Source of the DNA: Lytechinus pictus
Lineage: Eukaryota
Length of the DNA: 64,000 nucleotides
Assembly: GCF_037042905.1 (NCBI RefSeq)
Contig: NC_087262.1
Span: forward strand, 16,864,001-16,928,000
Reading direction: 5' to 3'
Shown here piece after piece: positions 188-58,890 of this stretch (positions are counted from its first letter, which is position 1; the number at the start of each line of letters is the position of its first letter). A program made the translations under genes and the position numbers. The notes under the pieces were generated by a model. The model saw only the letters and a program-made list of their open reading frames with translations, was not told the origin of the DNA and did no database searches.

Positions 188-817
188 ATGGCTGAAAAGA
201 TTGAAATAGAGAAAGCCTCCAGTTCTTCACAGAACCTGGTATGTCCGCTATGTCTTGATATTTTTTATGAACCAACGATCCTGACGTGCGGACACACTTT
301 CTGTCGAAAGTGTCTCAAGAAATATGATCTGACCCACCAGGACATTGACCACATGGTCTGTCCTCTCTGTAGGGAGATCACCAAGTTGTCTTCCAACCGA
401 GTCGACGATCTCCAACTCAATGTCTCCATTAACGGATTCGTAGACGATTACCACGCCAAGTGTGGAGGGATGAATTCTGTTCTTGAAATGAACCATAAAT
501 GCACAGCTTGCAAGTTTCAGCAAGACGCTGTCTCCTTCTGCAGAACATGTAATAACTACATATGTGATAAATGTTTACAATCTCACCAGTGTATGACAAT
601 GTTTGAAGATCACGAGATTGTCTCCATGGAGGATGTCATCGAAGGGAAGGTCAGCATTGGTCATCAATTTGAGAAATGCTCCATCCACAAACAAGAGAAC
701 AAAGATATGTTTTGTGATGATTGTAAGGTCAGTGTCTGTCTCAGGTGCGTGGTCGTTGGTCACAAGGTCCATAACATCAAGAACCAGTCGGACTTCGAGC
801 AGGAGTTGAGGCGAAAG
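188..817 (+). CDS. TRIM paralog 1, coding exon A (RING-HC, B-box1, B-box2). Joins 2146..3411 to give a 631-aa TRIM E3 ligase with an NHL-like propeller (TRIM56/TRIM2/3-like architecture)
   Basis: ATG at 188. RING: CPLC-x11-CGHTFCRKC-x15-CPLC. B-box1: CTAC..CRTC..CDKC..H..H. B-box2: CSIH..CDDC..CLRC..H..H. Donor AAG|GTAATG at 817/818, phase 0, conserved in all six copies; paralog similarity drops just after it. Confidence 0.93.
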
Positions 818-2145
818 GTAATGGTCATTTGAGATTTAGGGGTATCAAGTAGAAAACAATATCTTAAAGAAGATGCTGATGAAGATTGTGCCGCTGAAGG
901 AGAAGAAGATGATGATACTAGCTATTATTTTATTAATACCCCTGACTTCCTCGTCCTCCCCCTCAGTATAGAGACGCAGAACCAGTTGGGGTATACTTTT
1001 AAGCCTCCGATCTTTTTTTTTCAGTAAATGTGTACAAAAAATAAATGACAATATTATTGTGAAATGTTACATGCCCCCCCCCCCTTCTTGGATCAGCCCC
1101 CGCTCTCAAAACAATGCCACGACCCCAGTACCGTGTGAGTAAAAAAAAATGACACCTCATATTTTAACGAAAATATTATGCCATTTGCATAATCATATAT
1201 GGCCTGAAAGAATATTTTCTCCCAAATAACTTAATACGTTATTTATGTGGACTGTGTTCACGCTTGAATGATCAAGATATATTCTTTTATTCTTATTTGT
1301 ATTGATGTAAATTTTGATTTGCGCTAAAGCAAGACATGGCTGCAATAAATTACTCCATATGTCAGTGATGTCATAATATATACAAGAGTTCCATCAAAAT
1401 CCATTTCAGAATACGTTATCGATAATTTGCATTTATTGTTTAATAACGACTTTTAAGTATTAATTCTCAAGTTGATTTCATTGAAGGGATTTGCAAATTA
1501 ATATGTTTACTAATTCATGATCTGATGATGGATTATGAATGACATCATTGGCATACGGATTCGTTCATGGCAGTAATGCCAAACTTTCGCGCAAATCAAG
1601 ATTTGCATCACTGCAAAGAATACCAACTGTATCTAAGCGTGAAGACATACCACATAAATATGGAATTAAATTAAATCAAGATTTCCCTTAAAATGGGGAC
1701 TTATGAGGTGTCAAGTTTTTATTCACACGGTATATGGCTAATTGTGATATCAATGTTAATAATAACAATGAAAAATTGATGATGATAATTATAAATAATA
1801 ATGATATTGATAACAATAGTAATACTGATACTATTGTTAATTTTGACAAAATCTAAATTAATTCTAATAATAATAATAAAAAACTATCATTAATACATAT
1901 AATATAGCAGTAATAATACGACTACTCATATAATGGTAATAACTGTCACTCATATCATTCGTTGCCTCCCCTACCCCCCCCCCCTCCTCATCCAGAATAG
2001 AGATTAAAAAATATTGATGTTACAACTTCCCGGGTGTATTATGTTAAACTTTATAATGGTTACATTCATTCAAAATTCTTCTAAACATTGTTTACGTGAA
2101 TGATTATTTTACAGCAAACGGTTACTATTTTTTTTTCTCTCTTAG

Positions 2146-3411
2146 GTGACAGACCTTGCCCAGCAATGTGCAGCTAAGAAAGCAGAACTGGAGAAGAACA
2201 TTCAGAATATAGAATTACAACGTCATGAGGTACACACTGCCATGCAGAAACTACTAGATGATGTCAGCCAGGCTTACAGCATCAAGGTCAAAGAGCTGGA
2301 AGGAAATCTTCAAGATCTCATCGAGCAAATAAATGAACTAAAGCGAAGTTTCGAGGATGATCTCAACATCCTAAAGTCCAAGGAACGACAGAGGATCAAA
2401 AGCATTTGTAGTTCGGTTACATTGGTAGATAATGACAGACTGGGTCATCTTGAGACAGATAGTCTGTCCGCTCATAATTTGCTTTGTAATGAGCTAGAAG
2501 CTATGCTGAAAGAGGTTACCGATCGCACTACTGCGGAAGTTATTACAAAGAAAGCACAGGAGAAGAGTTTTAATCCTGGAGATAAATCTTGTCTTGACCT
2601 CGGGCGCATTTCAGGATCAGATCCCAAGTTAGAAACCATGAAGTGTATAGATCTACGAGAGCGGATGGTTGGAATGACAGCTTACACTCGTACCAGTGTG
2701 GCCATCGTATATGGGAATAATGCACGAGGTATTGATATCATTGATACTGCTGGTGGAACGGAGCAGTATACAAACATACCACATAACGTGCATGGTTATG
2801 TCGGTATTGTGATTCAGCGAGACGGTGTATTATGTGTCTCAACTGGTTGTACAGAAGCACACATGTATTCTACCAATGGCTCCAGGAAAGCAACAATCGA
2901 AGTGAATGTGGCTTGTTTTTATATCACACTGAACAGAAGTCCATCAAATGAGATCATCATTGCTAACGGTGCCAACAAAGTCTACATCTATGACCCGACT
3001 GGATCCACTCTCAAACACACTGTTCCAACAAAGCACAAGACATGGCAGGTATCATCCACCAGGTCTGGTTTGATCATCACCAGTTCTTGTCATCTCACCA
3101 ATCCAAGCGTGGTGACGGTCTATGACAGGGATGGGAATGCTGGTGAGTCTCTGCAAGCTCCAAAGGATGTCAACCTGTATGCTACCGTGGATGAGCAGGA
3201 CAGGGTGTATGTAGCGAGTGTTGATTATAAGAATAAGAAGGTGGTGATCAGGCTCTATGATCTTGATGGTCTGAACCTGAAGGAAAGAGTTGAGTTTAAT
3301 GCACTTGACATGACATTGGGTGATAATTGGTGTTACTTGGTGTCCCTCTCTCCGGACCTACTCGCCTTTGCTTGTATGAAGAAGTTATATTTCATCAAGG
3401 TATCGCTGTAA
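2146..3411 (+). CDS. TRIM paralog 1, coding exon B (coiled coil + NHL-like beta-propeller)
   Basis: Polypyrimidine tract and TTAG|GTG acceptor at 2145/2146. 421 open codons. Heptad-rich N-terminal half followed by repeating beta-strand blades (VYIYDPTG, VTVYDRDG, RLYDLDG). TAA stop. Confidence 0.92.
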   Translation: MTDLAQQCAAKKAELEKNIQNIELQRHEVHTAMQKLLDDVSQAYSIKVKELEGNLQDLIEQINELKRSFEDDLNILKSKERQRIKSICSSVTLVDNDRLGHLETDSLSAHNLLCNELEAMLKEVTDRTTAEVITKKAQEKSFNPGDKSCLDLGRISGSDPKLETMKCIDLRERMVGMTAYTRTSVAIVYGNNARGIDIIDTAGGTEQYTNIPHNVHGYVGIVIQRDGVLCVSTGCTEAHMYSTNGSRKATIEVNVACFYITLNRSPSNEIIIANGANKVYIYDPTGSTLKHTVPTKHKTWQVSSTRSGLIITSSCHLTNPSVVTVYDRDGNAGESLQAPKDVNLYATVDEQDRVYVASVDYKNKKVVIRLYDLDGLNLKERVEFNALDMTLGDNWCYLVSLSPDLLAFACMKKLYFIKVSL

Positions 3412-6400
3412 TAAAGAGTATACATGAACTATTGACTTTTATGAGATTATTTATAGTGTATCTGAAATGAGAATCCAATATGTTTGTAAACACCTTTCTG
3501 AATTTGTTTACATTTTGTGGTGTGTATATACACATAAATCTTAACACGAATCGAAGAACGTTCATACACATAAAATAATTTAATGAATGTAACTCGAGTA
3601 TCAAAAGACCATTATTTTTAATTATTTCGTGAATCTGAATTAACCACACAGTAAAAAAAAAACACGTTGTTTAAGCCTGTCACTCTAATAACAAGTTGTT
3701 TCACTTTCTTTGTAATTGTTTAAACATTTAAAAAAACTAGTTTTTAAGTTGTTTTTTAAAATAAACAGATGTTTAAAGGGTTTAACAGTAGTCGTTAGAG
3801 TGTCGGGCTTAAACAACGTGCTTGAAATCGTAAATAGCGTTTTTACAGTGTATTGCTGGTGTTGTCATTCAACTCGTGTAATTAACATGATTAAGCCAGC
3901 GTTTAATATTTTGGGGTCTCTGTTATAGAGAATTCGATGAAAGGCTAATGTATTAAACGAACTTTATATTTTGTGAGTTATAAGATTTGCTTTTGGAAAT
4001 TGTGTACAATCGATTTGCTGTTTTGTTGCAAGCCAGTCTATATTATTTGTGGATATACGTAAATATGATCTCGAAATTTTAGATTTTTTCTGTCCAGTGT
4101 TATGATGTGAAAATTAAAGGCCTAATAATTACGGATATCAGCTGAATTCTTTCCTATTCGACGATAAACCCATTAATCTGAATAGGCCTTAAGTTCTTCT
4201 TGTGTGGAATGTATAGTCCCCACAAACCACTTGATTTATTAATATTTTCATTTTATGAAATGTCCATAATTACAGGAATATTAATTTTGTATCAAAACAC
4301 CTCGCTGAATGATTAATGTTTATAATCAGTCACTACAAATACAAACTACGATATTAAAATATTTCAATTTCACGAGGGCATCCATAGACATGTTTTTATA
4401 TCAAAGAACTTGTTATTCTTTTTTTTTACTAGAAATTTTTTGCCTTTATTCAGAATACAACACATCATAGTATAAGTAGATAAGAACTTATATTTTCTTG
4501 CATTGCACATTGGCATACGTTCTTTTTCACAAAATTTAGGTTAGCTTAATAAATGACTATATTTCCATGAAATATAATAATCAAAACAATGAATCATAAT
4601 AAAGAAATGATACTTTGAACATTATAGAAATCAATATAAATCATGATAATTTGAATAAGGAACTTCTTATGAGAAAAGATGAATGGTTTACATTAAGCCA
4701 ATATGACACGGTGTATTTTATTACAATTTATCAATATAAGAATGATTATACAACATGAATATCGGACTATGTGTTTATAAATTGCCGTTTGTTTTATAAT
4801 GCCCTCTTTCGAGAGGATAATGACATGCTCTTCAAACAACATGGAAAGGTATCTATTGGAAACTGATTCTATCCAAAGATTATACAATGAATAATTTTCT
4901 GGAAAAAAATATATTATCATATTCACCGCTTTAGAAAATGTTGGACAGAAACAACACAAATACACATAGATACGCTTGTCCACCCCCCCCCCCCAAAAAA
5001 AAAAGGAAGTGATTGGTCTCTTTATTGTTTTTGTTTCTTAGATTTGACATTAATCTCTTAAAAGTGACAGAATGACGATTAGTACTGTAAATTATTTAAT
5101 ATAAGATAATACTGATAATTGTGACATCCTATAAGGTCTTACACTCTAATAATGAAACATTGAAAGGTTATTGAAATATGTTGATTCAGTATCTATATAT
5201 TCTATTTTCTAATTGAATTACTTGCGTGAAATTGCATAGATATAATGTGTATATGAATAATATTGAAATTTATATTGTTATTACATTCTCTATATCATAG
5301 TGTGCATAATGTATGTAAGGAAATGTTTACCATAGAATATAAATTTTACACTTTTTAAAGTTTTGATTTGACCCATATTTGTTTCTAATACCTCTATATT
5401 ATCTGGATCTCATACATATCAAATTAAGTTTAAAATGCTATTTCTATATGAATTATTATTGTATAATATTAAATGTATGAATGTGTTTTTATTATTGATA
5501 TTGATTGGTCAGTTCATTTAGCGATTGATCGCTAATCTTTGTGTTACGGAGCCCTGGTCTGGGAGGAAGGCCTTTGGGTGGTAGTAATTTATTTTAGGTT
5601 TTCCTTTCCTAGGCAACCCATGGGTCCCGTAACACAAAGATAAGTGATTAATTGCATATTTGATTTTTACGATTAATTGTATATTGTAGTCAATGCAATC
5701 AATCGTAGAATAATGTTCTACAATAATTGCTAAGCTCTGTCTTACGGGCCCATGGAGATGAATTGGTAAACATCCTCGTCTCTTTTGTTTTTGTATTTGT
5801 GTTCTCTTTGAAAATTTCATTTTGTTGATATACTGAACAAAAATAATAATAACAATGTATATACATGTAGAGGACTCCTCGCACGGATTAAAAAAAGTTG
5901 TACATGCATGGATTTTGAAGTTCAAACTTGTATGACTATTGACACTAAAAAAAGGGGATACCAAAAAAAAGGGGGTACTTTAAATGTTTCGTTGATAGAA
6001 AAACAATAACCGTCCCCATACAAATATCATTGATGTCTTCGGTTCGGTAAATAAATTAATTTGTTCTCTTCGTGAATATTTAGGTTTTTGTCGTTTGGAA
6101 ATTTATACACATGGATTTCTGGCAAGATAGACTATGGTCTTACCACATAGTAAGGGGGATTTTAAGTGAATGAATAAAAAAGATGTATAGTTTCATAATA
6201 TGATTTCTAAATATGTTTGTTCAGCTATTCGCTGCCTGCACTGGCATAATGTTTCTCTTCCGCGAATATCATATTTTCATATTTTATTTTGTACTCCATT
6301 TTCAACTTTAGATATTTTCATTTTATAGTGTTATTCTTTTAGTAGGTGTCGTCTTTCGTCTCTATCCGTTATTGTAGCCTGATTTTGTAAAATGCATATA

Positions 6401-14698: not shown

Positions 14699-14950
14699 GT
14701 AATGGTCATTTGAGATTTAGGGGTATCAAGTTGAAAAAAATATTTTAAAGATGCTGATGACGATTGTTCCGCTGATGGAGAGAAAAAAAGATGATACTAG
14801 CTATTCTTTTACTAATACCCCTAACCTCCTCGTCCTCCCCCTCATCTCGGGGACGAAGAACCAGTTGGGGTATATTTATAGGCCTCCGATCTTTTTTTCA
14901 GTAAATGTGTACCAAAAACTTAAATGACAATCTTATTGTGAAATGTTACA

Positions 14951-15560
14951 TTTTTGCCAATTCGTCTAATGCCAATTCGTCAACTCGTCTACTACCATTT
15001 GGTCTAGCATCTGTTCGTCTACTCATCAGATGGTCTCCTTTCATTTAGTCAAATGCCATTCCGTCTAATAACCAGTTGGTACAATAGCCATTTAGTCCTA
15101 ATGCCAATTCGTCAACTCGTCTACTACCATTTGGTCTATCATCTGTTCGTCTACTCACCAGATGGTCTCCTTTCATTTAGTCAAATGCCATTCCGTCTAA
15201 TAACCAGTTGGTACAATAGCCATTTAGTCCTAATGCCAATTCGTCAACTCGTCTACTACCATTTGGTCTATCATCTGTTCGTCTACTCACCAGATGGTCT
15301 CCTTTCATTTAGTCAAATGCCATTCCGTCTAATAACTAGTTGGTACAATAGCCATTTAGTCCATATAGCTTTTGGTCTAATTAAACTAAAGTGTTAATTG
15401 TGCAAAATGAATGAAAAGAAAATGGGTATTAGAACCAACTTGTTATTAGACGAAATGGTAATAGACGAAATGGTGATTAGACGAAGTGATGATTGGACAA
15501 AAAAAGTTATTGGACCAAATGGTTGATAGACGAAATGTTCATGGACGGAATGGCATTAGA
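14951..15560. mobile_element. Foldback/MITE with ~15-bp subrepeats in the paralog 2 intron; left arm amplified as 3 x 132 bp (14969-15360)
   Basis: CCATTTGGTCTA-type left-arm motifs oppose TAGACGAAATGG-type right-arm motifs. ATGCCAATTCGTCAACTC recurs at 14969, 15101 and 15233. Confidence 0.8.
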
Positions 15561-16471
15561 TTATTCCACGGCCCCCGTGTAGTAACTACCGTGTGATTTT
15601 TAAAAAAAATGTCACCTCACAAATCCCCAAATATGCCATTATATGGCCTGAAAATAATTGAATACCATATCTACGTGGTATATATATGTTAACGCTTGGA
15701 TGATCAGGAGGTATTCTTTGCAGTGATGTAAATTTTGATTTGCGCCAAATTAAGACATGGCTGCAATAAATGAATCCAGATGTCAATGATCAAGTGGCAG
15801 ACTCTAACAAGGGTTCCATCAAAATCCATTTCAGAATACGTTTTCAATAATTTACATTATAATTGTTTAACAAACACTTTTTACTAGTAACTCTCAGATT
15901 GATTTCATTGAAAAGGGATTTACAAATATGTTTACTAACTCATGTAGGATTATGAAATCATTGGCATTATGGATTCATTTATAGCAGTCATGCCTGACTT
16001 TGGCGCGAATCAAGATTTACATCACTGCAAAGAATACCAACTGATTATCTAAGCGTGAAGACATGCCACATAAATAAGGTATCAAAATACTTGGAAGAAG
16101 TATATATATTTTCAAATATAATGATTATGCATTCATGACATATTTTCCCCTTAGGGAATTATGAGGTGTCAAGATTGTCTTTATTTACACCGTTTAGGTC
16201 CATACTGCTAATGATGATAATAATGTTTATAACAACAATGACAATAATGATGATGATAATCAGAAATAATAAAAGTGGTAGTTATGGTAATAATGATACT
16301 GTTATCAATTTTAGCAAGATCTATATTAACTATAATAATAATGGTAATAATCATAATTAAAAGTATAATTAATAAAGATAATATAACAATAGTAATATGA
16401 TCACTCATATAATGATAATAATGATAATAACTGTCCCTCATATCCTTCGTTGCCTCCCTATCCGCCCCCCC

Positions 16472-16504
<33 letters not shown>

Positions 16505-16682
16505 TCCAGAATAGAGATCGGAGAAATTGATACAACTTCCCGGGTGTATATACAAGTCAGACATTATAATAGGTATATTTATTGATTTTTTTCTAAATAT
16601 AGAAACTACATTTACCATGTTTACGTGAATGATTCTTTGACGGCAAACAGTTACTACTTTTTTACTTTCTCGATCTTTACAG

Positions 16683-17948
16683 GTGACAGAGCTTGCCAAG
16701 CAATGTGCAGCTAAGAAAGCTGAGCTGGAAAAGAACATTCAGAATATAGAATTACAACGTCATGAGGTACACACTGCCATGCAGAAACTACTAGATGATG
16801 TCAGCCAGGCTTACAGCATCAAGGTTAAAGAGCTGGAAGGAAATCTTCAAGATCTCATCGAGCAAATAAATGAATTGAAGCGAAGTTTCGAGGATGATCT
16901 CAACATCCTAAAGTCCAAGGAACGACAGAGGATCAAAAGCATTTGTAGTTCGATTACATTGGTAGATAATGACAGACTGGGTCATCTTGAGACAGATAGT
17001 CTGTCCGCTCATAATTTGCTTTGTAATGAGCTAGAAGCTATGCTGAAAGAGGTTACCGATCGCACTACTGCGGAAGTTATTACAAAGAAAGCACAGGAGA
17101 CGAGTTTCAATCCTGGAGATAAATCTTGTCTTGACCTCGGGTTCATCTCGGGATCAGATCCCAAGTTAGAAATCATTAAGTGTATAGATCTACGGGGAAA
17201 AATGATTGGAATGACAGCTTACAGTCATACCAGTGTGGCCATCGTATATTGGAATAATGTACGAGGTATTGATATCATTGATACAGCTGGTGGAACGGAG
17301 CAGTATACAAACATACCACATGACGGCGTGGGTTATGGCGATATTATGATTCAACGGGACAATGCATTATGTGTCTCAACTGGTCGTACAGAAGCACACG
17401 TGTATTCTCCCGATGGCTCCAGGAAAGCAACAATCAACGTGAGTGGGACTGGTTATTATCTCAGACTGAACAGAAGTCCATCAAATGAGATCCTCATTGC
17501 TAACGGTGCCAACAAAGTCTACATCTATGACCCGACTGGATCCACTCTCAAACACACTGTTCCAACAAAGCACAAGACGTGGGAGGCATCATCCACCAGG
17601 TCGGGTTTGATCGTTACCAGTTCATGTAACGTCACCAATCCAAGCGTGGTGACGGTCTATGACAGGGATGGGAATGCTGGTGAGTCTCTACAAGCTCCAA
17701 TTGGTATCTACCTGTATGCTACCGTGGATGAGCAGGACAGGGTGTATGTAGCGAGTGTTGATTGTAAGAATAGGAAGGTGGTGATCAGGCTCTATGATCT
17801 TGATGGTCTGAACCTGAGGGAAAGAGTTGAGTTTAATGCACTTAAAATGACATTGGATTCTAGTTGGTGTTACTTGGTTTCCCTCTCTCCGGACCTACTC
17901 GCCTTTGCTTGTGACAAGAAGTTATATTTCATCAAGGTATCGCTGTAA
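16683..17948 (+). CDS. TRIM paralog 2, exon B (coiled coil + NHL-like propeller)
   Basis: TTTACAG|GTG acceptor; 421 open codons collinear with paralog 1 exon B. Confidence 0.92.
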   Translation: MTELAKQCAAKKAELEKNIQNIELQRHEVHTAMQKLLDDVSQAYSIKVKELEGNLQDLIEQINELKRSFEDDLNILKSKERQRIKSICSSITLVDNDRLGHLETDSLSAHNLLCNELEAMLKEVTDRTTAEVITKKAQETSFNPGDKSCLDLGFISGSDPKLEIIKCIDLRGKMIGMTAYSHTSVAIVYWNNVRGIDIIDTAGGTEQYTNIPHDGVGYGDIMIQRDNALCVSTGRTEAHVYSPDGSRKATINVSGTGYYLRLNRSPSNEILIANGANKVYIYDPTGSTLKHTVPTKHKTWEASSTRSGLIVTSSCNVTNPSVVTVYDRDGNAGESLQAPIGIYLYATVDEQDRVYVASVDCKNRKVVIRLYDLDGLNLRERVEFNALKMTLDSSWCYLVSLSPDLLAFACDKKLYFIKVSL

Positions 17949-26194: not shown

Positions 26195-28412
26195 ATGGCT
26201 GAAAAGATTGAAATTGAGAAAGCCTCTAGTTCTTTACAGAACCTGATATGTCCGCTATGTCTTGATATTTTTGATGAACCAACGATTCTGACGTGCGGAC
26301 ACACTTTAGATCGAAAGTGTCTCAAGAAATATGATCTGACCCACCAGCAGTGGCGTAACAGGCGGGGGGGCAGGGGGGCAAGTTGCCCCCCCTGGCGGAT
26401 TTCACCGGGAAAATAAAAGAAAAGCGGGAAAAAGAAAAAAAGAGGGAGAAAGAGAGGGAAAGGGGAAGGAAAGGGAAAAGGAAAGGAGGAAAGGGAAAAG
26501 TAAAGGGAAAATTAAAAGAAAACGAAGAAAAAACTTTTTTTTTAAATGGAAAAGGAAGGAAAGCCGGAAAATGTACCAAAGAAGAACATTTGAGAAAGAA
26601 CAAATCATTTCGAAATAGGCCTATGTAATGCAATAGCACGGTGGGAACAAATTAAAATATGATAAAATGGCAAACAATAGCGGGAAGCGAAGATAGAATG
26701 TAATTAGTCAAAAACTAAAGTGGAAAACAAAGAAAAGGGACACGAACAAAAATAATAACACGACCGGGCTGCCGATGATTGAAATTAAAAAGCGGGAAGA
26801 AAAATGGACTGCATACAACATTGCTCTATAAGGTTGCTAAATTATATGCAAATAAGCTACCGGGGCTTTGCCCCAGACCCCACGCAGTAGGGGTTCTTCA
26901 TTTATAACATTCAAATGGCTCTATAACGCCCCCCCCCCCCGTACAATCACGTTAAATCGCTGGCATACAGGCGCGGAGGGGGGGGGGGGTCTTGGTTCCA
27001 CACCAAAGAGCAAATAATAGAAATTATAGGAGACAACGTATAATGAAATGAATGGAAACAATGAAATGTGTTATTTGCTGAATATAATGGAAAAATCTAT
27101 CACATAATAAGAATTTGATTTCAAAAGGCAATTTTTTTTCCAGCTCGCTTTGCACGCTGGCGACTTTTAACAAATTTTTCCCACATTGCTATGTTTTGCC
27201 CCCTCAAAATATGTTGCTTCATTACGCAACTGGGTTGAATAAAAACTATATGCCCGCGATTTGATTGAAATAGCGGCAATCTGCGAGGTTTAAATGGCTT
27301 TGATATCAAGAAGTTCCGGGGGCTCCGCCCCGGACCCCAACCGCACAGCACTGCGTATATGGAAGGGTTGGGCCATGGCCCAAAATAGTTCTACAGACAA
27401 GAAAAAAAGGAGGAAAGAAAAGCAATGGAAAAGTGTAGGATATGATTTTATTTACTGAATATAATGTCAAAAAAATAGCTCAAAGTTAGATTCTCATGAA
27501 AAGGTGATTTTTTTCTCGCTCGCTTCGCTCGGGACTTGTATATAAAGCAGCTTTTTAGCACATGTGCTATACTGCGCCCCTCGTTTTTTTTTACTCTTCA
27601 CGCTGCTGCAGCAAAGAATCCTGTTCACAGTGGCGTACAGACCACAAAAAAGGAATCTAAAGAAAGAATAGTGAAATATTTTCTGGATATCATGTCAAAA
27701 TCTACCATAAAATTGGATTTTTCTATTAAAAAGGTCAAAATTTTTGCTCACTCGCTTCGCTCGCTTGCAACTTTTTTTAAAAGATAAATTCTGCCCGATA
27801 CGCAATATCTGGCCTTCTCAAAATAGTCGCCTCAGCTCATTACACCATTACGCCTGTTCATGCCATGATATGACCGGGAAATGTTTTGCTCTTGCCCCCC
27901 TGGCCACCGACCCTTGTTACGCCGCTGCCCATCAGGACATTGACCACATGGTCTGTCCTCTCTGCAGGGAGATCACCAAGTTGTCTGCCAACCGTGTCGA
28001 CGATCTCCGCCTCAATGCCTCCATCAACGGATGCGTAGACGATTACCACGCTGAGTGTGGAGGGATGAATGTTGTCCTTGAGATGCGTACAAAATGTACC
28101 GGTTGCAAGTTTCAGCAAGACGCTGTCTCCTTTTGCATAACATGTAATAACTACATATGTGATAAATGTTTACAATCTCACCAGTGTATGACCATGTTTG
28201 AAGATCACGAGATTGTCTCCATGGATGATGTCATCGAAGGGAGGGTCAGCATTGGTCATCTATTTGAGAAATGCTCCATCCACAAACAAGAGAACAAAGA
28301 TATATTTTGTGATGATTGTAAGGTCCGTGTCTGTCTCAGGTGCGTGGTCGTTGGTCACAAGGTCCATAACATCAAGAACCAGTCTGACTTTGAGCAGGAA
28401 TTGAGGCGAAAG
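26195..28412 (+). pseudogene. TRIM paralog 3 pseudogene: exon A interrupted by a 1.58-kb transposon, RING Cys lost (HTFCRKC>HTLDRKC), exon B absent
   Basis: Exon A halves at 26195-26347 and 27928-28412 flank the insertion. Intron homology stops at about 29220, and no exon B occurs before paralog 4. Confidence 0.93.
26348..27927. mobile_element. Non-autonomous hAT-type transposon (1580 bp) inserted in the RING exon
   Basis: TIRs CAGTGGCGTAACA / TGTTACGCCGCTG; 8-bp TSD CCCACCAG (26340-47) / CCCATCAG (27928-35); empty site in five paralogs. Confidence 0.92.
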
Positions 28413-32232: not shown

Positions 32233-33635
32233 CAGAGACGCTCGTGGCGCAATTGACGCAATGCTGTTAATTATATATACAAGTACATTACAGAAATTTT
32301 GTTCAACATTATAAAAAAAAATCAGGCTTAATTTATTGATAAATCAATATAGAAAAATAAACTTTGTTGATTTTACACACTTGTTTGAACAATAAGATTC
32401 ATGTAACTTTGTACAGTGTTTTTACTGTGTAGAGATAATACAGTACGTGTATCTCTCAATCATGTCAATGATCCAAAAATTGATAAATATAGTACGCCCT
32501 CTATCGATAAGATGACAAATGGTTCCATGAAGTTCAAAGGTAGCTGGGAAAAACCAGTTCTATTAATAATTATACTATTATGCTATTGTATTATATCGCA
32601 GCTTCCTCATTCTTTATTAATGTGCACAAAGTCATATTGTAATAGGAGTTCCGCGCACACAGTCAGTTCACGACCGTGCACGTATATACCAAGTTTTTAC
32701 TCGTAGCTATCTCTCACAACTAAGTAGTACTCAGTTTCGTTGAAATAGTTTGTCTCTAGAGTTTATATAGCAATGGCTGAAAAGATTGAAATAGGGAAAG
32801 CCTCTAGTTCTTCACAAAACCTGATATGCCCGCTATGTCTTGATATTTTTGATGAACCAACGATCCTGAGGTGTGGACACACCTTCTGTCGTAAGTGTCT
32901 CAAGAAATATGATCTGACCCACCAGGACATTGACCACATGGTCTGTCCTCTCTGCAGGGAGATCACCAAGTTGTCTGCCAACCGTGTCGACGATCTCCGC
33001 CTCAATGTCTCCATCAACGGATTCGTAGACGACTACCACGCCAAGTGTGGAGGGATGAATGCTGTCCTTGAGATGTGTACCAAATGTACTGGTTGCAAGT
33101 TTCAGCAAGACGCTGTCTCCTTCTGCATAACATGTAATAACTACATATGTGATAAATGTTTACAATCTCTTTGAAGATCACGAGATTGTCTCCGTGGAGG
33201 ATGTCATCGAAGGGAAGGTCAGCATTGGTCATCAATTTGAGAAATGCTCCATCCACAAACAAGAGAACAAAGATATGTTTTGTGATGATTGCAAGGTCCG
33301 TGTCTGTCTCAGGTGCGTGGTCGTTGGTCATAAGGTCCATAACATCAAGAACCAGTCTGACTTCGAGCATGAGTTGAGGCGAAAGGTAATGGTCATCCAA
33401 AAAAATTGATATTAAGTAGAAAAATAATATTTTGAGAAGATACTGATGTAGATTGTGCCGCTGAAGGAGAAAAAGATGATGATACTAGCTATTCTTTTAA
33501 TGACCCTGACCTCCTCGTCCTCCCTCCTCATCTAGGGGACGCAGAACAAGTTGGGGTATACTCATAGACCTTCGATTTTTTTTCAGTAAATGTGTACAAA
33601 AAACTAAAATGACAATCTTATTGTGAAATGTTACA

Positions 33636-34860: not shown

Positions 34861-36231
34861 GTGACAGAACTTGCCCAGCAATGTGCAGCTAAGAAAGCTG
34901 AGCTGGAAAAGAACATTCAGAATATAGAATTACAACGTCATGAGGTACACACTGCCATGCAGAAACTACTAGATGATGTCAGCCAGGCTTACAGCATCAA
35001 GGTCAAAGAGCTGGAAGGAAATCTTCAAGATCTCATCGAGCAAATAAATGAACTAAAGCGAAGATTCGAGGATGATCTCAACATCTTAAAGTCTAAGGAT
35101 CGACAGAGGATCAAGAGCATTTGTAGTTCGATTACATTGGTAGATAATGACAGACTGGGTCATCTTGAGACAGATAGTCTGTCTGCTCATAATATGCTCT
35201 GTGATGAGCTAGGTGCCATGCTGAAAGAGGTTACCGATCGCACTACTGCGGAAGTTATTGCAAATAAAGCGCAGGAGAAGAGGTTCAATCCTGCGGATGC
35301 TACTTGTCTTCACCTTGGAAAAATATCAGACCCTATCGATCACACTTCTACTGTTGCTATCACGGAGAAAGCACAGAAGAGGTTGAATCCTGCAGATAAA
35401 TCTTGTCTTGACCTCGGGAGCATCTCTGGATCGGATTCCAAGTTAGAAATCATTAAGTGTATAGATCTACGGGGACAAATGGTTGGAATGACAGCTTACA
35501 CTCATACCAGTGTGGCCATCGTATATGGGATTTATACACGAGGTATTGATATCATTGATACAGCTGGTGGAACGGAGCAGTATACAAACATACCACATGA
35601 CGTGGGTTACGTCGATATTGTGTTCAAACGAGACGGTGCATCATGTGTCTCAACTAGTACTACAGAAGCACGCGTGTATTCTCCCAATGGCTCCAGGAAA
35701 GCAACAATCAACGTGAGTGGGGCTGGTCATTATCTCAAACTGAACAGAAGTCCATCAAATGAGATCCTCATTGCTAACGGTACCAACAAAGTCTACATCT
35801 ATGACCCGACAGGGTCCACTCTCAAACACACTGTTCCAACAAAGCACCTGACGAGGCAGGCATCATCCACCAGGTTGGGTTTGATCGTCACCAGTTCATG
35901 TACTCTCACCAATCCAAGCGTGGTGACGGTCTATGACAGGGATGGGAATGCTGGTGAGTCTATACAAGCTCCAGTCCTAGGGAGTGTCTACCTGTATGTT
36001 ACCGTGGATGAGCGAGACAGGGTGTATGTAGCGAGTGTTGATTGTAAGAAGAATAGGAAGGTGGTGATCAGGCTCTATGATCTTGATGGTCTGAACCTGA
36101 GGGAAAGAGTTGAGTTTAATGCACTTGATATGACATTGAATTCTACTTGGTGTTACTTGGTTTCCCTCTCTCCGGACCTACTCGCCTTTGCTTGTTACAA
36201 GAAGTTATATTTCATCAAGGTATTGCTGTAA
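34861..36231 (+). CDS. TRIM paralog 4, exon B open frame (coiled coil, long linker, NHL-like propeller); out of frame with the exon A ATG
   Basis: TTTACAG|GTG acceptor; 456 uninterrupted codons. Confidence 0.6.
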   Translation: MTELAQQCAAKKAELEKNIQNIELQRHEVHTAMQKLLDDVSQAYSIKVKELEGNLQDLIEQINELKRRFEDDLNILKSKDRQRIKSICSSITLVDNDRLGHLETDSLSAHNMLCDELGAMLKEVTDRTTAEVIANKAQEKRFNPADATCLHLGKISDPIDHTSTVAITEKAQKRLNPADKSCLDLGSISGSDSKLEIIKCIDLRGQMVGMTAYTHTSVAIVYGIYTRGIDIIDTAGGTEQYTNIPHDVGYVDIVFKRDGASCVSTSTTEARVYSPNGSRKATINVSGAGHYLKLNRSPSNEILIANGTNKVYIYDPTGSTLKHTVPTKHLTRQASSTRLGLIVTSSCTLTNPSVVTVYDRDGNAGESIQAPVLGSVYLYVTVDERDRVYVASVDCKKNRKVVIRLYDLDGLNLRERVEFNALDMTLNSTWCYLVSLSPDLLAFACYKKLYFIKVLL

Positions 36232-46149: not shown

Positions 46150-46779
46150 ATGGCTGAAAAGATTGAAATAGAGAAAGCCTCCAGTTCTTCACAGAACCTG
46201 GTATGTCCGCTATGTCTTGATATTTTTGATGAACCAACGATCCTGACGTGCGGACACACTTTCTGCCGTAAGTGTCTCAAGAAATATGATCTGACCCACC
46301 AGGACATTGACCACATGGTCTGTCCTCTCTGCAGGGAGATCACCAAGTTGTCTTCCAACCGAGTCGACGATCTCCGCCTCAATGTCTCCATTAACGGATT
46401 CGTAGACGATTACCACGCCAAGTGTGGAGGGATGAATGCTGTCCTTGAGATGCGTACAAAATGTACTGGTTGCAAGTTTCAGCAAGACGCTGTCTCCTTC
46501 TGCAGAACATGTAATAACTACATATGTGACAAATGTTTACAATGCCATCACTACATGGAACTTTTTGAAGATCACGAGATTGTCTCCATGGAGGATGTCA
46601 TCGAAGGGAAGGTCAGCATTGGTCATCAATTTGAGAAATGCTCCATCCACAAACAAGAGAACAAAGATATGTTTTGTGATGATTGTAAGGTCCGTGTCTG
46701 TCTCAGGTGCGTGGTCGTTGGTCATAAAGTCCATAACATCAAGAACCAGTCTGACTTCGAGCATGAGTTGAGGCGAAAG
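46150..46779 (+). CDS. TRIM paralog 5, exon A (RING, B-box1, B-box2). Joins 48485..49843, 662 aa
   Basis: All Zn ligands present; 630 nt; donor AAG|GTAATG at 46779/46780. Confidence 0.93.
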
Positions 46780-48484: not shown

Positions 48485-49843
48485 GTGACAGAGCTTGCCA
48501 AGCAATGTGCAGCTAAGAAAGCTGAGCTGGAAAAGAACATTCAGAATATAGAATTACAACGTCATGAGGTACACACTGCCATGCAGAAACTACTAGATGA
48601 TGTCAGCCAGGCTTACAGCATCAAGGTAAAAGAGCTGGAAGGAAATCTTCAAGATCTCATCGAGCAAATAAATGAATTGAAGCGAAGTTTCGAGGATGAT
48701 CTCAACATCCTAAAGTCCAAGGAACGACAGAGGATCAAAAGCATTTGTAGTTCGATTACATTGGTAGATAATGACAGACTGGGTCATCTTGAGACAGATA
48801 GTCTGTCCGCTCATAATTTGCTTTGTAATGAGCTAGAAGCTATGCTGAAAGAGGTTACCGATCGCACTACTGCGGAAGTTATTACAAAGAAAGCACAGGA
48901 GAAGAGTTTTAATCCTGGAGATGCTACTTGTCTTGAACTCGGAAAAATCTCAGACCCTATCAATCACACTTTTACTGTTGATATCACGGAGAAAGCACTG
49001 AAGAGTTTTAATCCTGCAGATAAATCTTGTCTGGACCTCGGGAGCATCTCGGGATCAGATCCCAAGTTAGAAATCATGAAGTGTATAGATCTACGGGGAG
49101 AAATGATTGGAATGACAGCTTACACTCATACCAGTGTGGCCATCGTATATGGGATTTATACACCAGGTATTGATATCATTGATATAGCTGGTGGAACGGA
49201 GCAGTATACAAACATACCACATGACGTGGGTTATAGAGATATTGCGATTCTACGAGACAGAACATTATGTGTCTCAACTAGTTCTACAGAAGCACACGTG
49301 TATTCTCCCAATGGCTCCAGGAAAGCAACAATCAACGTGAGTGAGACTTTTTATTATCTCAAACTGAACAGAAGTCCATCAAATGAGATCCTCATTGCTA
49401 ACGCTGCCAACAAAGTCTACATCTATGACCCGACTGGATCCACTCTCAAACACACTGTTCCAACAAAGCACAATACGTGGGAGGCATCATCCACCAGGTC
49501 GGGTTTGATCGTCACCAGTTCATGTTTCATCAATCCAAGCGTGGTGACGGTCTATGACAGGGATGGGAATGCTGGTGAGTCTCTGCAAGCTCCAAAGGAT
49601 GTCTACCTGTATGCTACCGTGGATGAACAGGACAGGGTGTATGTAGCGAGTGTTGATGATAAGAATAGGAAGGTGGTGATCAGGCTCTATGATCTTGATG
49701 GTCTGAACCTGAGGGAAAGAGTTGAGTTTAATGCACTTGATATGACATTGGGTTCTACTTGGTGTTACTTGGTTTCCCTCTCTCCGGACCTACTCGCCTT
49801 TGCTTGTATGAGTAAGTTATATATCACCAAGGTATCGCTGTAA
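48485..49843 (+). CDS. TRIM paralog 5, exon B (coiled coil, long linker, NHL-like propeller)
   Basis: TTTACAG|GTG acceptor; 452 open codons. Confidence 0.92.
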   Translation: MTELAKQCAAKKAELEKNIQNIELQRHEVHTAMQKLLDDVSQAYSIKVKELEGNLQDLIEQINELKRSFEDDLNILKSKERQRIKSICSSITLVDNDRLGHLETDSLSAHNLLCNELEAMLKEVTDRTTAEVITKKAQEKSFNPGDATCLELGKISDPINHTFTVDITEKALKSFNPADKSCLDLGSISGSDPKLEIMKCIDLRGEMIGMTAYTHTSVAIVYGIYTPGIDIIDIAGGTEQYTNIPHDVGYRDIAILRDRTLCVSTSSTEAHVYSPNGSRKATINVSETFYYLKLNRSPSNEILIANAANKVYIYDPTGSTLKHTVPTKHNTWEASSTRSGLIVTSSCFINPSVVTVYDRDGNAGESLQAPKDVYLYATVDEQDRVYVASVDDKNRKVVIRLYDLDGLNLRERVEFNALDMTLGSTWCYLVSLSPDLLAFACMSKLYITKVSL

Positions 49844-55143: not shown

Positions 55144-55773
55144 ATGGCTGAAAAGATTGAAATAGAGAAAGCCTCTAGTTCTTCACAGAACCTGATATGT
55201 CCGCTATGTCTTGATATTTTTGATGAACCGACGATCCTGATGTGCGGACACACTTTCTGTCGAAAGTGTCTCAAGAAATATGATCTAACCCACCAGGACA
55301 TTGACCACATGGTCTGCCCTCTCTGCAGGGAGATCACCAAGTTGTCTGCCAACCGTGTCGACGATCTCCGACTCAATGTCTCCATTAACGGATTCGTAGA
55401 CGATTACCACGCCAAGTGTGGAGGGATGAATTCTGTTCTAGAAATGAACCATAAATGCACAGCTTGCAAGTTTCAGGAAGACGCTGTCTCCTTTTGCAGA
55501 ACATGTAATAACTACATGTGTGATAAATGCCTTCAATGTCATCAACGTCTTAGTGTGTTCGAAGGTCACGAGATTGTCTCCATGGAGGATGTCATCGAAG
55601 GGAAGGTCAGCATTGGTCATCTATTCGAGAAATGCTTCATCCACAAACAAGAGAACAAAGATATGTTTTGTGATGATTGTAAGGTCCGTGTCTGTCTCAG
55701 GTGCGTGGTCGTTGGTCATAAGGTCCATAACATCAAGAACCAGTCTGACTTCGAGCAGGAATTGAGGCGAAAG
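55144..55773 (+). CDS. TRIM paralog 6, exon A (RING, B-box1, B-box2). Joins 57628..58890, 630 aa
   Basis: All Zn ligands present; 630 nt; donor AAG|GTAATG at 55773/55774. Confidence 0.93.
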
Positions 55774-56054
55774 GTAATGGTTATTTTTAACAATTGGAAT
55801 ATTAAGTAAAGAAAAATATTTAAAAGGAGATGCTGATGTAGATTGTGCCGCTGAAGGAAAAGAAAAAGATGATGATACTAGCTATTATTTTACTAATACC
55901 GCTGACCTCCTCCTCCCTCCTTATATAGGGGAGGCGGAACCAGTTGGGGTATACTTAAAGGCCTCCGATTATTTTCAGTAAATGTGTACAAAAAACTAAA
56001 GTGACAATCTTATGGTGAAATGTTACATGCCCCCCCCCCCTCCCTTCTCGGATC

Positions 56055-57564: not shown

Positions 57565-57567
<3 letters not shown>

Positions 57568-57622
<55 letters not shown>
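57568..57622 (+). repeat. (CT)n microsatellite forming the polypyrimidine tract of the paralog 6 acceptor
   Basis: About 27 CT units immediately before GTTAG|GTG. Confidence 0.95.
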
Positions 57623-57625
<3 letters not shown>

Positions 57626-57627
57626 AG

Positions 57628-58890
57628 GTGACAGCCCTTACCCAGCAATGTGCAGCTAAGAAAGCTGAGCTGGAAAAGAACATTCAGAATATCGAAGAAC
57701 AACGTCATGAGGTACACACTGCCATGCAGAAACTGCTAGATGATGTCAGGCAGGCTTACAGCATCAAGGTCAAAGAGATGGAAGGAAATCTTCAAGATCT
57801 CATTGAGCAAATAAATGAATTGAAGCGAAGTTTCGAGGATGATCTCAACATCTTAAAGTCCAAGGATCGACAGAGGATTAAAAGCATTTGCAGTTCGATT
57901 ACATTGGTATATAATGACAGACTGGGTCATCTTGAGACAGACAGTCTTTCTGCTCATAACTTGCTGTGTGATGAGCTAGAAGCTATGCTGAAAGAGGTTA
58001 CCGATCGCACTACTGCGGAAGTTATTGCAAAGAAAGCACAGGAGAAGAGATTGAATCCTGGAGATAAATCTTGTCTTGACCTCGGGTTCATCTCAGTAGC
58101 AGATCCCAAGTTAGAAAGAATGAAGTGTATAGATCTACGAGAGCGGATGATTGGAATGACTAGGTACACTCATACCAGTGTGGCCATCGTATATGGGAGT
58201 AGTGCACGAGGTATTGATATCATTGATACAGCTGGTGGAACGGAGCAGTATACAAACATACCACACGACGTGGGTTATGAAGATATTGTGTTCGAACGAG
58301 ACAATGCATTATGTGTCTCAACTAGTTCTACAGAAGCACACATGTATTCTCCCAATGGCTCCAGGAAAGCAACAATTAACGTGAGTGGGACTGGTTATTA
58401 TCTCAGACTGAACAGAAGTCCATCAAATGAGATCCTCATTGCTAACGCTGCCAACAAAGTCTACATCTATGACCCGACTGGATCCACTCTCAAACACACT
58501 GTTCCAACAAAGCACAGGACGTGGGAGGCATCATCCACCAGGTCTGGTTTGATCGTCACCAGTTCATGTGAACTCACCAATCCAAGCGTGGTGACGGTCT
58601 ATGACAGGGATGGGAATGCTGGTGAGTCTCTACAAGCTCCAATGTATGTCTACCTGTATGCTACCGTGGATGAGCAGGACAGGGTGTATGTAGCGAGTGT
58701 TGATAAGAAGAATAGGAAGGTGGTGATCAGGCTCTATGATCTTGATGGTCTGAACCTGAAGGAAAGAGTTGAGTTTAATGCACTTAATATGACATTGTAT
58801 AATAAGTGGTGTTACTTGGTTTCCCTCTCTCCGGACCTACTCGCTTTTGCTTGTTGGAAGAAGTTATATTTCATCAAGATATCGCTGTAA
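57628..58890 (+). CDS. TRIM paralog 6, exon B (coiled coil + NHL-like propeller)
   Basis: (CT)n-GTTAG|GTG acceptor; 420 open codons. Confidence 0.92.
   Translation: MTALTQQCAAKKAELEKNIQNIEEQRHEVHTAMQKLLDDVRQAYSIKVKEMEGNLQDLIEQINELKRSFEDDLNILKSKDRQRIKSICSSITLVYNDRLGHLETDSLSAHNLLCDELEAMLKEVTDRTTAEVIAKKAQEKRLNPGDKSCLDLGFISVADPKLERMKCIDLRERMIGMTRYTHTSVAIVYGSSARGIDIIDTAGGTEQYTNIPHDVGYEDIVFERDNALCVSTSSTEAHMYSPNGSRKATINVSGTGYYLRLNRSPSNEILIANAANKVYIYDPTGSTLKHTVPTKHRTWEASSTRSGLIVTSSCELTNPSVVTVYDRDGNAGESLQAPMYVYLYATVDEQDRVYVASVDKKNRKVVIRLYDLDGLNLKERVEFNALNMTLYNKWCYLVSLSPDLLAFACWKKLYFIKISL

What the first reader, a model, noticed from the sequence alone, without database searches (positions are those of the whole stretch)
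188..58890. Tandem array of TRIM-beta-propeller genes with hypervariable loops on one propeller face: candidate diversified intracellular immune receptor family
Seen in the sequence: across the five exon-B proteins (copies 1/2/4/5/6) the coiled coil and strand cores are almost identical, but 12 short patches differ, alternating two per ~40-aa blade. They are LR[ERMV/GKMI/GQMV/GEMI/ERMI]G; IVY[GNNAR/WNNVR/GIYTR/GIYTP/GSSAR]G; PH[NVHGYVG/DGVGYGD/DVGYVD/DVGYRD/DVGYED]I; VST[GC/GR/ST/SS/SS]TE; V[NVACFYIT/SGTGYYLR/SGAGHYLK/SETFYYLK/SGTGYYLR]LN; AN[GA/GA/GT/AA/AA]NK; KH[KTWQ/KTWE/LTRQ/NTWE/RTWE]; SSC[HLT/NVT/TLT/FI/ELT]NP; AP[KDVN/IGIY/VLGSVY/KDVY/MYVY]LY; VD[Y/C/CK/D/K]KN; MTL[GDN/DSS/NST/GST/YNK]W; AC[MK/DK/YK/MS/WK]K. 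The changes are radical, often multi-nucleotide, and include in-frame indels, while neighbouring silent sites barely differ. Established: in NHL/WD-type propellers the d-a and b-c loops form the top ligand-binding face, and vertebrate TRIM5 and fish finTRIM arrays diversify their C-terminal PRY-SPRY loops under pathogen pressure. Inference: this is an analogous system using a propeller as the variable sensor coupled to a constant RING E3 effector. Expanded TRIM56-like families are known in invertebrates, but I cannot verify whether this family or its loop diversification has been described.
Basis: partly seen in the sequence, partly recalled or inferred. Interest (0 to 1): 0.9.

Follow-up and report, generated by a model that had tools for sequence, protein, structure and literature searches.

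The report
Sea urchin hypervariable-propeller TRIM ligase array
Part of a large tandem array of sea urchin (Lytechinus pictus) ubiquitin-ligase genes that are almost constant except for twelve loops on the binding face of a propeller domain, where selection has driven the copies apart, as in germline-encoded immune receptor families.

Summary
The window (Lytechinus pictus) carries six two-exon TRIM copies. Four look intact (1, 2, 5, 6). Copy 4 has a 17-bp frameshift deletion in exon A. Copy 3 is a fragment. All 12 variable patches are as quoted.

An AlphaFold model (pLDDT 95.9) gives a six-bladed propeller. Its best solved matches are TRIM-NHL domains (Z 23-26). Its best reviewed match is the TRIM56 C-terminus (TM 0.77-0.79). 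Pfam sees no domain there.

The 12 patches are the 12 d-a and b-c loops, which form the top face. One extra variable patch lies in a bottom-face loop.

Codon models on 17 paralogs of this cluster:
- Propeller omega is 1.45 overall; 12.6% of sites have omega about 8 (2dlnL 297).
- Coiled coil is 0.36; RING/B-boxes 0.14-0.20.

A second cluster on another chromosome gives the same result, with 13 shared selected sites (p 2e-10). The signal survives strong recombination (blade-wise trees) and exceeds intron divergence.

Copy 2 is transcribed and spliced as predicted.

An immune or defence role is inferred, not shown. The scan found this family before on other DNA of this genome (s1-294496, s1-294480). 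I found no paper in the searchable library describing it.

The parts
188..817 (+). Copy 1 exon A: RING (C3HC4), B-box1, B-box2; ends AAG|GTAATG
   Evidence: ORF and Pfam hits for RING and B-box; splice donor read
2146..3411 (+). Copy 1 exon B: coiled coil, linker and six-bladed NHL-like propeller, with stop
   Evidence: identical to locus L007
14069..14698 (+). Copy 2 exon A (protein P0001, 631 aa, named 'TRIM45-like' by NCBI)
   Evidence: RNA contigs cover it
14699..16682 (+). Copy 2 intron (GT..AG, phase 0) with a high-copy repeat at about 15052-15771
   Evidence: Joint 14698|16683 in an X3 contig (depth 22) and in 2 raw RNA-seq reads of X19
16683..17948 (+). Copy 2 exon B; the propeller domain starts at 17145
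   Evidence: AF2 model of P0001:365-631, pLDDT 95.9
17190..17918 (+). Copy 2: the 12 hypervariable top-face loops (coordinates in the evidence column) and one extra bottom-face a-b loop at 17352-17366
   Evidence: Loops at 17190-17201, 17250-17267, 17307-17339, 17379-17390, 17439-17462, 17502-17513, 17565-17582, 17622-17645, 17694-17705, 17763-17774, 17832-17867, 17913-17918. Loop coordinates from DSSP of the model; selected sites
26195..28409 (+). Copy 3: exon A remnant (26195-26347 and 27918-28409) split by about 1.57 kb of inserted DNA; no exon B follows
   Evidence: tblastn and alignment
32773..33385 (+). Copy 4 exon A with a 17-bp deletion after 33169 inside B-box1, giving a frameshift
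34861..36231 (+). Copy 4 exon B, open frame, long form with a 33-aa linker duplication (about 35296-35394)
46150..46779 (+). Copy 5 exon A
48485..49843 (+). Copy 5 exon B, long form with the 33-aa linker duplication (about 48920-49018)
55144..55773 (+). Copy 6 exon A
57628..58890 (+). Copy 6 exon B (identical to locus L005)

Best explanation
The window holds six members of an array of about 20 copies (at least 18 with an intact exon B) on one strand of a Lytechinus pictus chromosome. This array belongs to a family of at least 60 genes, so far named only from sea urchins. Each gene encodes a TRIM E3 ubiquitin ligase: RING, two B-boxes, a coiled coil and a divergent six-bladed NHL-like propeller closest to that of TRIM56. 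The RING, B-boxes, coiled coil, propeller strands and bottom loops are held constant by purifying selection and by gene conversion between copies. The twelve d-a and b-c loops form the top, ligand-binding face. They are driven apart by positive selection and reshuffled among copies by recombination. The most likely function is a germline-encoded repertoire of intracellular recognition modules. Each copy would bind a different non-self ligand (viral or other parasite protein or RNA) on its top face and mark it, or signal, through RING-dependent ubiquitination. This parallels TRIM5alpha and fish finTRIMs with their B30.2 loops. Shown here: gene structure, fold, location of the variable sites, positive selection, recombination, transcription and splicing. 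Inferred: E3 activity, ligand class and the defence role.
For: Architecture: Pfam RING and B-box hits in exon A; the splice is confirmed in RNA. Fold: AF2 pLDDT 95.9, pTM 0.92, 24 strands. The top 16 solved matches are all TRIM-NHL domains, Z 23-26, aligned end to end. The best Swiss-Prot model is TRIM56. Face: b-c and d-a loops define the top surface (PMC4015489). The model's C-terminus aligns with the TRIM2 C-terminus, which lies on the bottom surface (PMC9634614). Selection: M0 omega is 1.45 in the propeller against 0.36 in the coiled coil. M1a vs M2a gives 2dlnL 297, and M7 vs M8 gives 298. A second cluster gives 2dlnL 222, with 13 shared sites, p 1.8e-10. By DSSP class, top loops have dN 0.204 and dS 0.108, while strands and bottom loops are below 1. 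Cross-validated sites have dN about 0.5, dS about 0.13 and non-coding divergence 0.15-0.35. Blade-wise trees keep every segment significant. Exon A omega is 0.14-0.20. Recombination: PHI-type test p<0.001; coiled-coil and propeller trees disagree. Family size and array. Indirect immune link: many TRIM45-, TRIM71-, TRIM33- and TRIM56-like genes are induced in S. purpuratus coelomocytes (PMC13043383), and this family carries the same automatic names.
Against: No ligand, no E3 assay and no immune-challenge or tissue-resolved expression data exist for these genes. The tissues of the RNA runs used are unknown. The S. purpuratus genes induced in coelomocytes could not be mapped to this family by identifier. 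One selected patch (model residues 70-74) lies on the bottom face. The site models were my own implementation with branch lengths fixed up to a scale factor, not PAML or HyPhy. Two of the six copies in the window are broken.
Confidence: 0.62

Rival explanations
1. Same genes and same selection, but the diversified face binds RNA rather than protein. Under this view the family is a set of TRIM-NHL-type RNA binders, like Brat, LIN-41 or the RNA-binding C-terminus of TRIM56. Its specificities have radiated to target viral or transposon RNAs, or different endogenous mRNAs, for repression or decay.
For: The closest folds are the RNA-binding TRIM-NHL domains and TRIM56. Loop residues of the top face carry net charge 0 to +7 and bottom loops -4 to -7 in all 18 copies. 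This matches the electropositive top and electronegative bottom of Brat, whose top face is its RNA platform (PMC4015489). TRIM56 restricts Zika virus through RNA binding by its C-terminal part (PMC6623546, abstract).
Against: Selected positions use every residue class, including W, Y, C, D and E, which fits protein epitopes at least as well. Charge was counted from loop sequence, not from a surface calculation. No RNA-binding test was done.
Confidence: 0.25
2. Diversification is driven by a conflict or recognition process other than pathogens. Candidates are control of transposable elements or other selfish elements, allorecognition, or a germline or reproductive conflict.
For: Positive selection with birth-and-death tandem arrays also marks such systems. 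Fungal NLRs with hypervariable WD-repeat propellers serve allorecognition (PMC1805685). The array contains repeat insertions, and the intron repeat of copy 2 is highly represented in the laid RNA contigs.
Against: The protein is predicted to be cytosolic with no signal peptide or membrane segment in these copies, which argues against gamete or cell-surface recognition. Like-named genes in S. purpuratus are induced in immune cells (PMC13043383).
Confidence: 0.1
3. There is no adaptive diversification. The loops are simply unconstrained, and exon-wide gene conversion lowers dS, so dN/dS only appears to exceed 1.
For: Non-coding flanks diverge more (JC 0.15-0.35) than exon silent sites (about 0.09), and recombination is strong. 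Conversion therefore does depress dS.
Against: Within the same loop codons dN is twice dS. At sites chosen in one cluster and measured in the other, dN is about 0.5. That is above dS (0.13-0.15) and above every non-coding estimate. The same 13 positions recur in two independent clusters. Each blade-sized segment is significant on its own tree. Open frames are kept in at least 50 copies.
Confidence: 0.03

Closest known systems
TRIM56 (vertebrate RING, B-box, coiled coil, NHL-like C-terminus; antiviral E3 ligase)
   Same: Same domain order without a filamin domain. The propeller model's best reviewed structural match is TRIM56 residues about 460-750 (TM 0.77-0.79). More distant sea urchin relatives of this propeller are auto-named TRIM56-like.
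   Different: Only 14-15% identity in the propeller. Orthology was not tested. Vertebrate TRIM56 is, to my knowledge, a single conserved gene. Here there are at least 60 paralogs in tandem arrays with a positively selected top face.
Canonical TRIM-NHL proteins (Brat, Mei-P26, LIN-41/TRIM71, TRIM2, TRIM3, TRIM32/Thin, NHL-2)
   Same: Six-bladed NHL fold with the N- and C-terminal strands in blade 6, Z 23-26 over about 245-250 residues. The blades follow the NHL sequence pattern. Charge is positive on top loops and negative on bottom loops.
   Different: The Pfam NHL model does not detect the domain. There is no filamin domain. Canonical members belong to the conserved, slowly evolving 'group 1' TRIMs (PMC2533329), whereas this family evolves fast on the binding face.
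TRIM5alpha and fish finTRIM/btr arrays (B30.2/PRY-SPRY loops under positive selection)
   Same: [quoted passage not shown] Tandem multigene arrays. Positive selection focused on loops of the C-terminal recognition domain (PMC2657112, title and abstract).
   Different: The variable domain is a beta-propeller, not B30.2. Rapidly evolving TRIMs were thought to be the SPRY-bearing 'group 2', which is absent from invertebrates (PMC2533329).
Fungal HNWD/HET-E NLRs with hypervariable WD-repeat propellers
   Same: Hypervariable positions on the interaction face of a propeller. Positive selection combined with concerted evolution and repeat or segment exchange (PMC1805685, PMC2873952).
   Different: Different propeller type (WD40, seven-bladed), different effector (NACHT/STAND) and different kingdom. 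There, diversity arises by shuffling repeats within a gene; here it arises by exchange among paralogous genes.

Membership tests
TRIM / RBCC E3 ligases | N-terminal C3HC4 RING finger | tested here: met
   Pfam zf-RING_UBOX 3e-10 and zf-C3HC4 at residues 19-61. All eight ligands are present in copies 1, 2, 5 and 6.
TRIM / RBCC E3 ligases | One or two B-boxes after the RING | tested here: met
   PF00643 hits two stretches (best 163-198). A B-box1-type hit lies at 101-144 (PF22586, PF25287).
TRIM / RBCC E3 ligases | Coiled coil after the B-boxes | tested here: inconclusive
   The first ~130 residues of exon B gave only weak sub-threshold Pfam hits to assorted families, some from coiled-coil-rich proteins. 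That part was not modelled or run through a coil predictor.
TRIM-NHL (class C-VII) | NHL repeats recognised by sequence profile (PF01436) | tested here: not met
   No Pfam hit for the window's propellers. Only 1 of 42 family members touches PF01436, at E 0.0024.
TRIM-NHL (class C-VII) | Six-bladed NHL propeller fold closed by N- and C-terminal strands in blade 6 | tested here: met
   AF2 pLDDT 95.9. The top 16 solved neighbours are all TRIM-NHL domains, Z 23-26, rmsd 2.8-3.4.
TRIM-NHL (class C-VII) | Filamin/IG-FLMN domain between coiled coil and NHL (present in most members, absent in TRIM32) | tested here: not met
   No filamin hit. Only a linker of about 35 aa (short form) or about 68 aa (long form) lies between them.
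TRIM56 orthologs | Closest relationship to TRIM56 among TRIMs | tested here: inconclusive
   TRIM56 is the best structural match in Swiss-Prot models, but identity is only 14-15% and no phylogeny was built.
Diversified germline-encoded immune receptor families (TRIM5/finTRIM type) | Tandem multigene family with birth and death of copies | tested here: met
   About 20 copies in this array (18 with an intact exon B), at least 32 on another chromosome, plus fragments and pseudogenes.
Diversified germline-encoded immune receptor families (TRIM5/finTRIM type) | Positive selection focused on the ligand-binding surface | tested here: met
Diversified germline-encoded immune receptor families (TRIM5/finTRIM type) | Expression in immune cells or induction by infection; binding of non-self ligands | not testable with these tools
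   Transcription and splicing are shown, but the tissue is unknown. The only other evidence is the indirect report from S. purpuratus coelomocytes (PMC13043383).

The most novel reading that the evidence does not exclude
Sea urchins carry a lineage-specific, germline-encoded repertoire of at least 60 TRIM56-like E3 ligases. Their electropositive NHL top face has been turned into a CDR-like variable surface of 12 loops, diversified by positive selection and recombined among paralogs by gene conversion. The surface would recognise distinct viral or transposon RNAs or proteins. This would be an invertebrate counterpart of TRIM5/finTRIM built on a propeller from the supposedly conserved 'group 1' TRIMs, and a fourth large innate receptor expansion in echinoids beside TLR, NLR and SRCR.
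Probability: 0.35. Interest if true: 0.85.

Novelty: new variant of a known kind. Interest (0 to 1): 0.72.

Why it matters
Rapidly evolving antiviral TRIM arrays have been regarded as a vertebrate innovation tied to the B30.2/SPRY domain. NHL-type TRIMs count as conserved developmental regulators (PMC2533329). This family shows the same evolutionary logic on an NHL-like propeller in an invertebrate deuterostome: a constant E3 effector, a hypervariable recognition face, and tandem birth-and-death with conversion. The signal is very strong and was replicated. It gives a defined set of about 25 candidate specificity-determining positions. The species is genetically tractable, so ligand hunting and knock-outs are feasible. 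It may also explain why many 'TRIM45/71-like' genes are among the most induced genes in urchin coelomocytes (PMC13043383).

Tried and rejected
- Pfam on the C-terminal domain found nothing, so I classified it by fold instead.
- The first site-model script exceeded the time limit. I reran it with a faster optimiser and 5 beta classes.
- PAML and HyPhy are not installed. The M0, M1a, M2a, M7, M8 and M8a likelihoods are my own code on IQ-TREE GY trees, with branch lengths fixed up to a scale factor. My M0 lnL matched IQ-TREE's (-3888.7 vs -3889.2).
- A single-tree analysis is unsafe because recombination is strong. I repeated it with 3 and 6 segment-specific trees and with tree-free, cross-validated pairwise counts.
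- I considered relaxed constraint plus gene conversion as the full explanation and rejected it.
- Model coordinates are not exposed, so I could not measure 3D clustering or solvent exposure. The face was assigned from strand order, the NHL definition (PMC4015489) and the end-to-end alignment to TRIM2.
- I tried to link the S. purpuratus genes induced in coelomocytes to this family through the paper's supplements. Only LOC identifiers are given and they cannot be mapped here.
- The raw RNA-seq runs X19 and X20 gave very few reads on copy 2 at 6% sampling, so no expression level can be stated.
- Eight literature searches found no description of this family's loop diversification. A ninth retrieved the fungal WD-repeat analogue. 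The library lacks most subscription journals.
Full report
WHAT IS THERE

The window is G000:C18:16864001-16928000 of an 812-Mb assembly. Exact protein matches identify it as Lytechinus pictus, the painted sea urchin.

tblastn finds six exon-A copies and five exon-B copies, all on the + strand. Exon A encodes about 210 aa with a C3HC4 RING and two B-boxes (Pfam). It ends at a conserved AAG|GTAATG donor. Exon B starts at a conserved ag|GTGACAG acceptor in phase 0. The predicted proteins are about 631 aa (short form) or 664 aa (long form, with a 33-aa linker duplication, copies 4 and 5).

The junction of copy 2 (14698|16683) is present in a contig of run X3 and in two raw RNA-seq reads of run X19. 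In X1 and X3 the exons are covered while unique intron bins have zero depth. Copy 2 is therefore transcribed and spliced as predicted. NCBI already annotates it (P0001, 'TRIM45-like').

Copies 1, 2, 5 and 6 look intact. Copy 4 has a 17-bp deletion after base 33169 inside B-box1, which causes a frameshift. Copy 3 is an exon-A remnant split by about 1.57 kb of inserted DNA, with no exon B.

CHECK OF THE OBSERVATION

The five exon-B proteins align at 85-88% identity to copy 1. All 12 quoted patches, including their indels, are reproduced exactly.

Nei-Gojobori estimates give dN/dS of 0.14-0.35 in the coiled coil and 0.97-3.11 in the propeller, with propeller dS of only 0.03-0.09.

THE FAMILY

A six-frame search of the genome finds:
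- about 20 copies, 18 with an intact exon B, at C18:16.62-16.96 Mb, all on one strand;
- at least 32 copies in two clusters on C14, at about 70-73% identity;
- more on C21, C9, C1, C16, C2, C11, C12 and C6 (these are lower bounds).

Among 1.84 billion representative proteins only 69 clusters match the propeller at E<=1e-3. Every named relative comes from an echinoid: L. pictus, L. variegatus, S. purpuratus or Diadema antillarum.

FOLD

Pfam recognises nothing in the C-terminal 267 aa.

AlphaFold2 with a 42-sequence alignment gives mean pLDDT 95.9 and pTM 0.92, with 24 strands forming six four-stranded blades.

Foldseek and VIA-align put TRIM-NHL domains first: Mei-P26, Brat, TRIM2, Thin, TRIM3, NHL-2, LIN-41 and TRIM71. 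Z is 23-26 and rmsd 2.8-3.4 A over about 245-250 residues, aligned end to end (for example model 8-267 with TRIM2 470-744).

Among reviewed proteins the best model match is the C-terminal region of TRIM56 (TM 0.77-0.79, 14-15% identity). The domain is therefore a strongly diverged NHL-type propeller. Orthology was not tested.

WHICH FACE

On the DSSP string, the 12 patches are exactly the 12 loops that follow odd-numbered strands.

The blade sequences follow the NHL pattern: a strand, short turn, b strand, variable loop, c strand ending in Y/D, D-x-G turn, d strand. The variable loops are therefore the b-c and d-a loops.

By definition these loops form the top surface of NHL propellers, and that surface is the RNA-binding platform in Brat (PMC4015489).

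Independent support comes from the C-terminus. The model's C-terminus aligns with the TRIM2 C-terminus, which lies on the bottom surface (PMC9634614). The loop preceding the last strand (patch 12) must then be on top.

I had no coordinates, so this is a topological assignment, not a measured one.

SELECTION

I built codon alignments of 17 distinct exon-B copies of the C18 cluster and 15 copies of a C14 cluster. I fitted codon site models with my own code on IQ-TREE GY trees.

C18 cluster:

| Region / test | Result |
|---|---|
| Propeller, M0 | omega 1.45 |
| Propeller, M1a vs M2a | 2dlnL 297 |
| Propeller, M7 vs M8 | 2dlnL 298 |
| Propeller, M8a vs M8 | 2dlnL 297 |
| Propeller, M2a selected class | 12.6% of sites, omega about 8 |
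| Coiled coil, M0 | omega 0.36 |

C14 cluster:

| Region / test | Result |
|---|---|
| Propeller, M0 | omega 1.06 |
| Propeller, M2a selected class | 13.8% of sites, omega 7.4 |
| Propeller, M1a vs M2a | 2dlnL 222 |

Sites with posterior above 0.95 number 21 in C18 and 25 in C14. Thirteen are shared (hypergeometric p 1.8e-10). Fifteen of 21 and 20 of 25 lie in top-face loops (Fisher 1e-5 and 1e-8). The exceptions are mainly residues 70, 73 and 74 in the a-b loop of blade 2, on the bottom face.

Classing codons by DSSP alone, without using variability, gives:

| Class | dN | dS |
|---|---|---|
| Top loops | 0.204 | 0.108 |
| Strands | 0.041 | 0.061 |
| Bottom loops | 0.056 | 0.071 |
| Coiled coil | 0.034 | 0.117 |

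Exon A has dN/dS of 0.14-0.20.

CONTROLS

Recombination among paralogs is strong. A PHI-type statistic is 0.46 observed against 0.61 +/- 0.01 permuted, in both clusters. The coiled-coil and propeller trees also conflict.

I therefore refitted M1a and M2a on 3 and on 6 segments, each with its own tree. The summed LRTs are 283 and 252. Every blade-sized segment is significant on its own (LRT 18-66), with omega 5.5-12.

Non-coding flanks between paralogs diverge by JC 0.15-0.35, more than exon silent sites at about 0.09. Conversion therefore lowers dS and could inflate omega.

However, sites chosen in one cluster and measured in the other have:
- dN 0.49 and dS 0.13 in C18;
- dN 0.51 and dS 0.15 in C14.

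These dN values are above every neutral estimate. Relaxed constraint alone cannot produce this.

MECHANISM

Shown here:
- a constant RING/B-box/coiled-coil module under purifying selection;
- a variable top face under positive selection;
- exchange of segments among paralogs;
- transcription and splicing of copy 2.

Inferred from what TRIM proteins do:
- coiled-coil dimers with RING-dependent ubiquitination;
- the propeller as the substrate or ligand selector.

The best reading is a germline repertoire of intracellular recognition E3 ligases directed at fast-evolving non-self ligands.

The ligand class is open. Top-loop residues carry net charge 0 to +7 and bottom loops -4 to -7 in all copies. 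This is the same polarity as the RNA-binding Brat NHL domain (PMC4015489). TRIM56 uses its C-terminal part to bind viral RNA (PMC6623546). RNA is therefore a serious candidate. The selected positions also use aromatic, acidic and cysteine residues, which fits protein epitopes.

A link to immune cells is only indirect. In S. purpuratus coelomocytes, many TRIM45-, TRIM71-, TRIM33- and TRIM56-like genes are among the most induced genes after UVB, mostly in phagocytes (PMC13043383). These are the automatic names that this family carries. I could not map the identifiers.

COMPARISON AND NOVELTY

Diversified TRIM arrays are known for B30.2/SPRY TRIMs such as TRIM5 and finTRIM (PMC2657112). These are the 'group 2' TRIMs, held to be absent from invertebrates. 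NHL-type 'group 1' TRIMs are described as conserved (PMC2533329).

Hypervariable propeller faces are known in fungal WD-repeat NLRs (PMC1805685).

A TRIM family that uses an NHL-like propeller as the variable module was not found in nine full-text searches. The one relevant paper only notes that S. purpuratus has about 140 annotated TRIM genes.

I rate it a new variant of a known kind.

The scan itself has reported the same family before, on DNA 70 kb upstream of this window (s1-294496) and on another chromosome piece (s1-294480), with the same reading. My analysis included copies from both regions and agrees.

Noticed in passing
window 26195-28409 and 32773-33385: Copy 3 is an exon-A remnant split by about 1.57 kb of inserted DNA, with no exon B. 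Copy 4 has a 17-bp deletion after 33169 in B-box1 that shifts the frame, although its exon B (34861-36231) is still open. This shows birth-and-death turnover inside the array.
   Followed up: partly
window 35296-35394 and 48920-49018: Copies 4 and 5, and five more copies elsewhere in the array, carry an in-frame 33-aa tandem duplication of the linker between coiled coil and propeller. This gives 'short' and 'long' protein forms that are interleaved along the array.
   Followed up: partly
window 15052-15771 (intron of copy 2): A high-copy repeat. Summed contig depth in runs X1 and X3 is in the thousands there, against 20-340 on the exons. Raw RNA-seq reads pile up on it with loose ends, so it looks like an expressed transposable element family.
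   Followed up: no
window about 14028-14058, and the equivalent about 40 bases before each exon-A ATG: A conserved leader motif (AGTTTCGTTGAAATAGTTT) precedes the ATG of all six copies. It lies inside the transcribed 5' UTR, since an RNA contig starts at 13939. It contains GAAA/TTTC half-sites reminiscent of IRF/ISRE elements, but this was not tested.
   Followed up: no
window exon A codons 91-150 (e.g. 458-637 in copy 1): The B-box1 segment has dS 0.54 between window copies, against 0.11 in the RING and B-box2 on either side. Its dN/dS is still 0.19. It is an old haplotype block that escaped homogenisation, further evidence that the genes are mosaics.
   Followed up: partly
window 17628-17631: A contig of run X3 differs from copy 2 by four adjacent bases that change exactly the two selected codons of loop 8 (N,V to F,L). 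It has only one other difference in 172 bases. This is either an allele differing at hypervariable sites or a converted paralog; the two could not be told apart.
   Followed up: no
L006 (C18:16790627-16794886) vs L007 (window 649-4908): Copy 1 and a copy 74 kb upstream are nearly identical over 4.26 kb, with 4 mismatches and a few small indels. L015 and L016 on C14 are identical over 4.25 kb. These are very recent segmental duplications or assembly duplicates.
   Followed up: partly
window about 57570-57625: A long (CT)n microsatellite lies directly in front of the exon-B acceptor of copy 6, replacing the polypyrimidine context conserved in the other copies.
   Followed up: no
window 16208-16738 (- strand): The 176-aa ORF listed here is low-complexity sequence (poly-Gly, Ile/Thr/His runs) lying mostly in the intron of copy 2 and running into the start of its exon B. 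It is not a gene.
   Followed up: no
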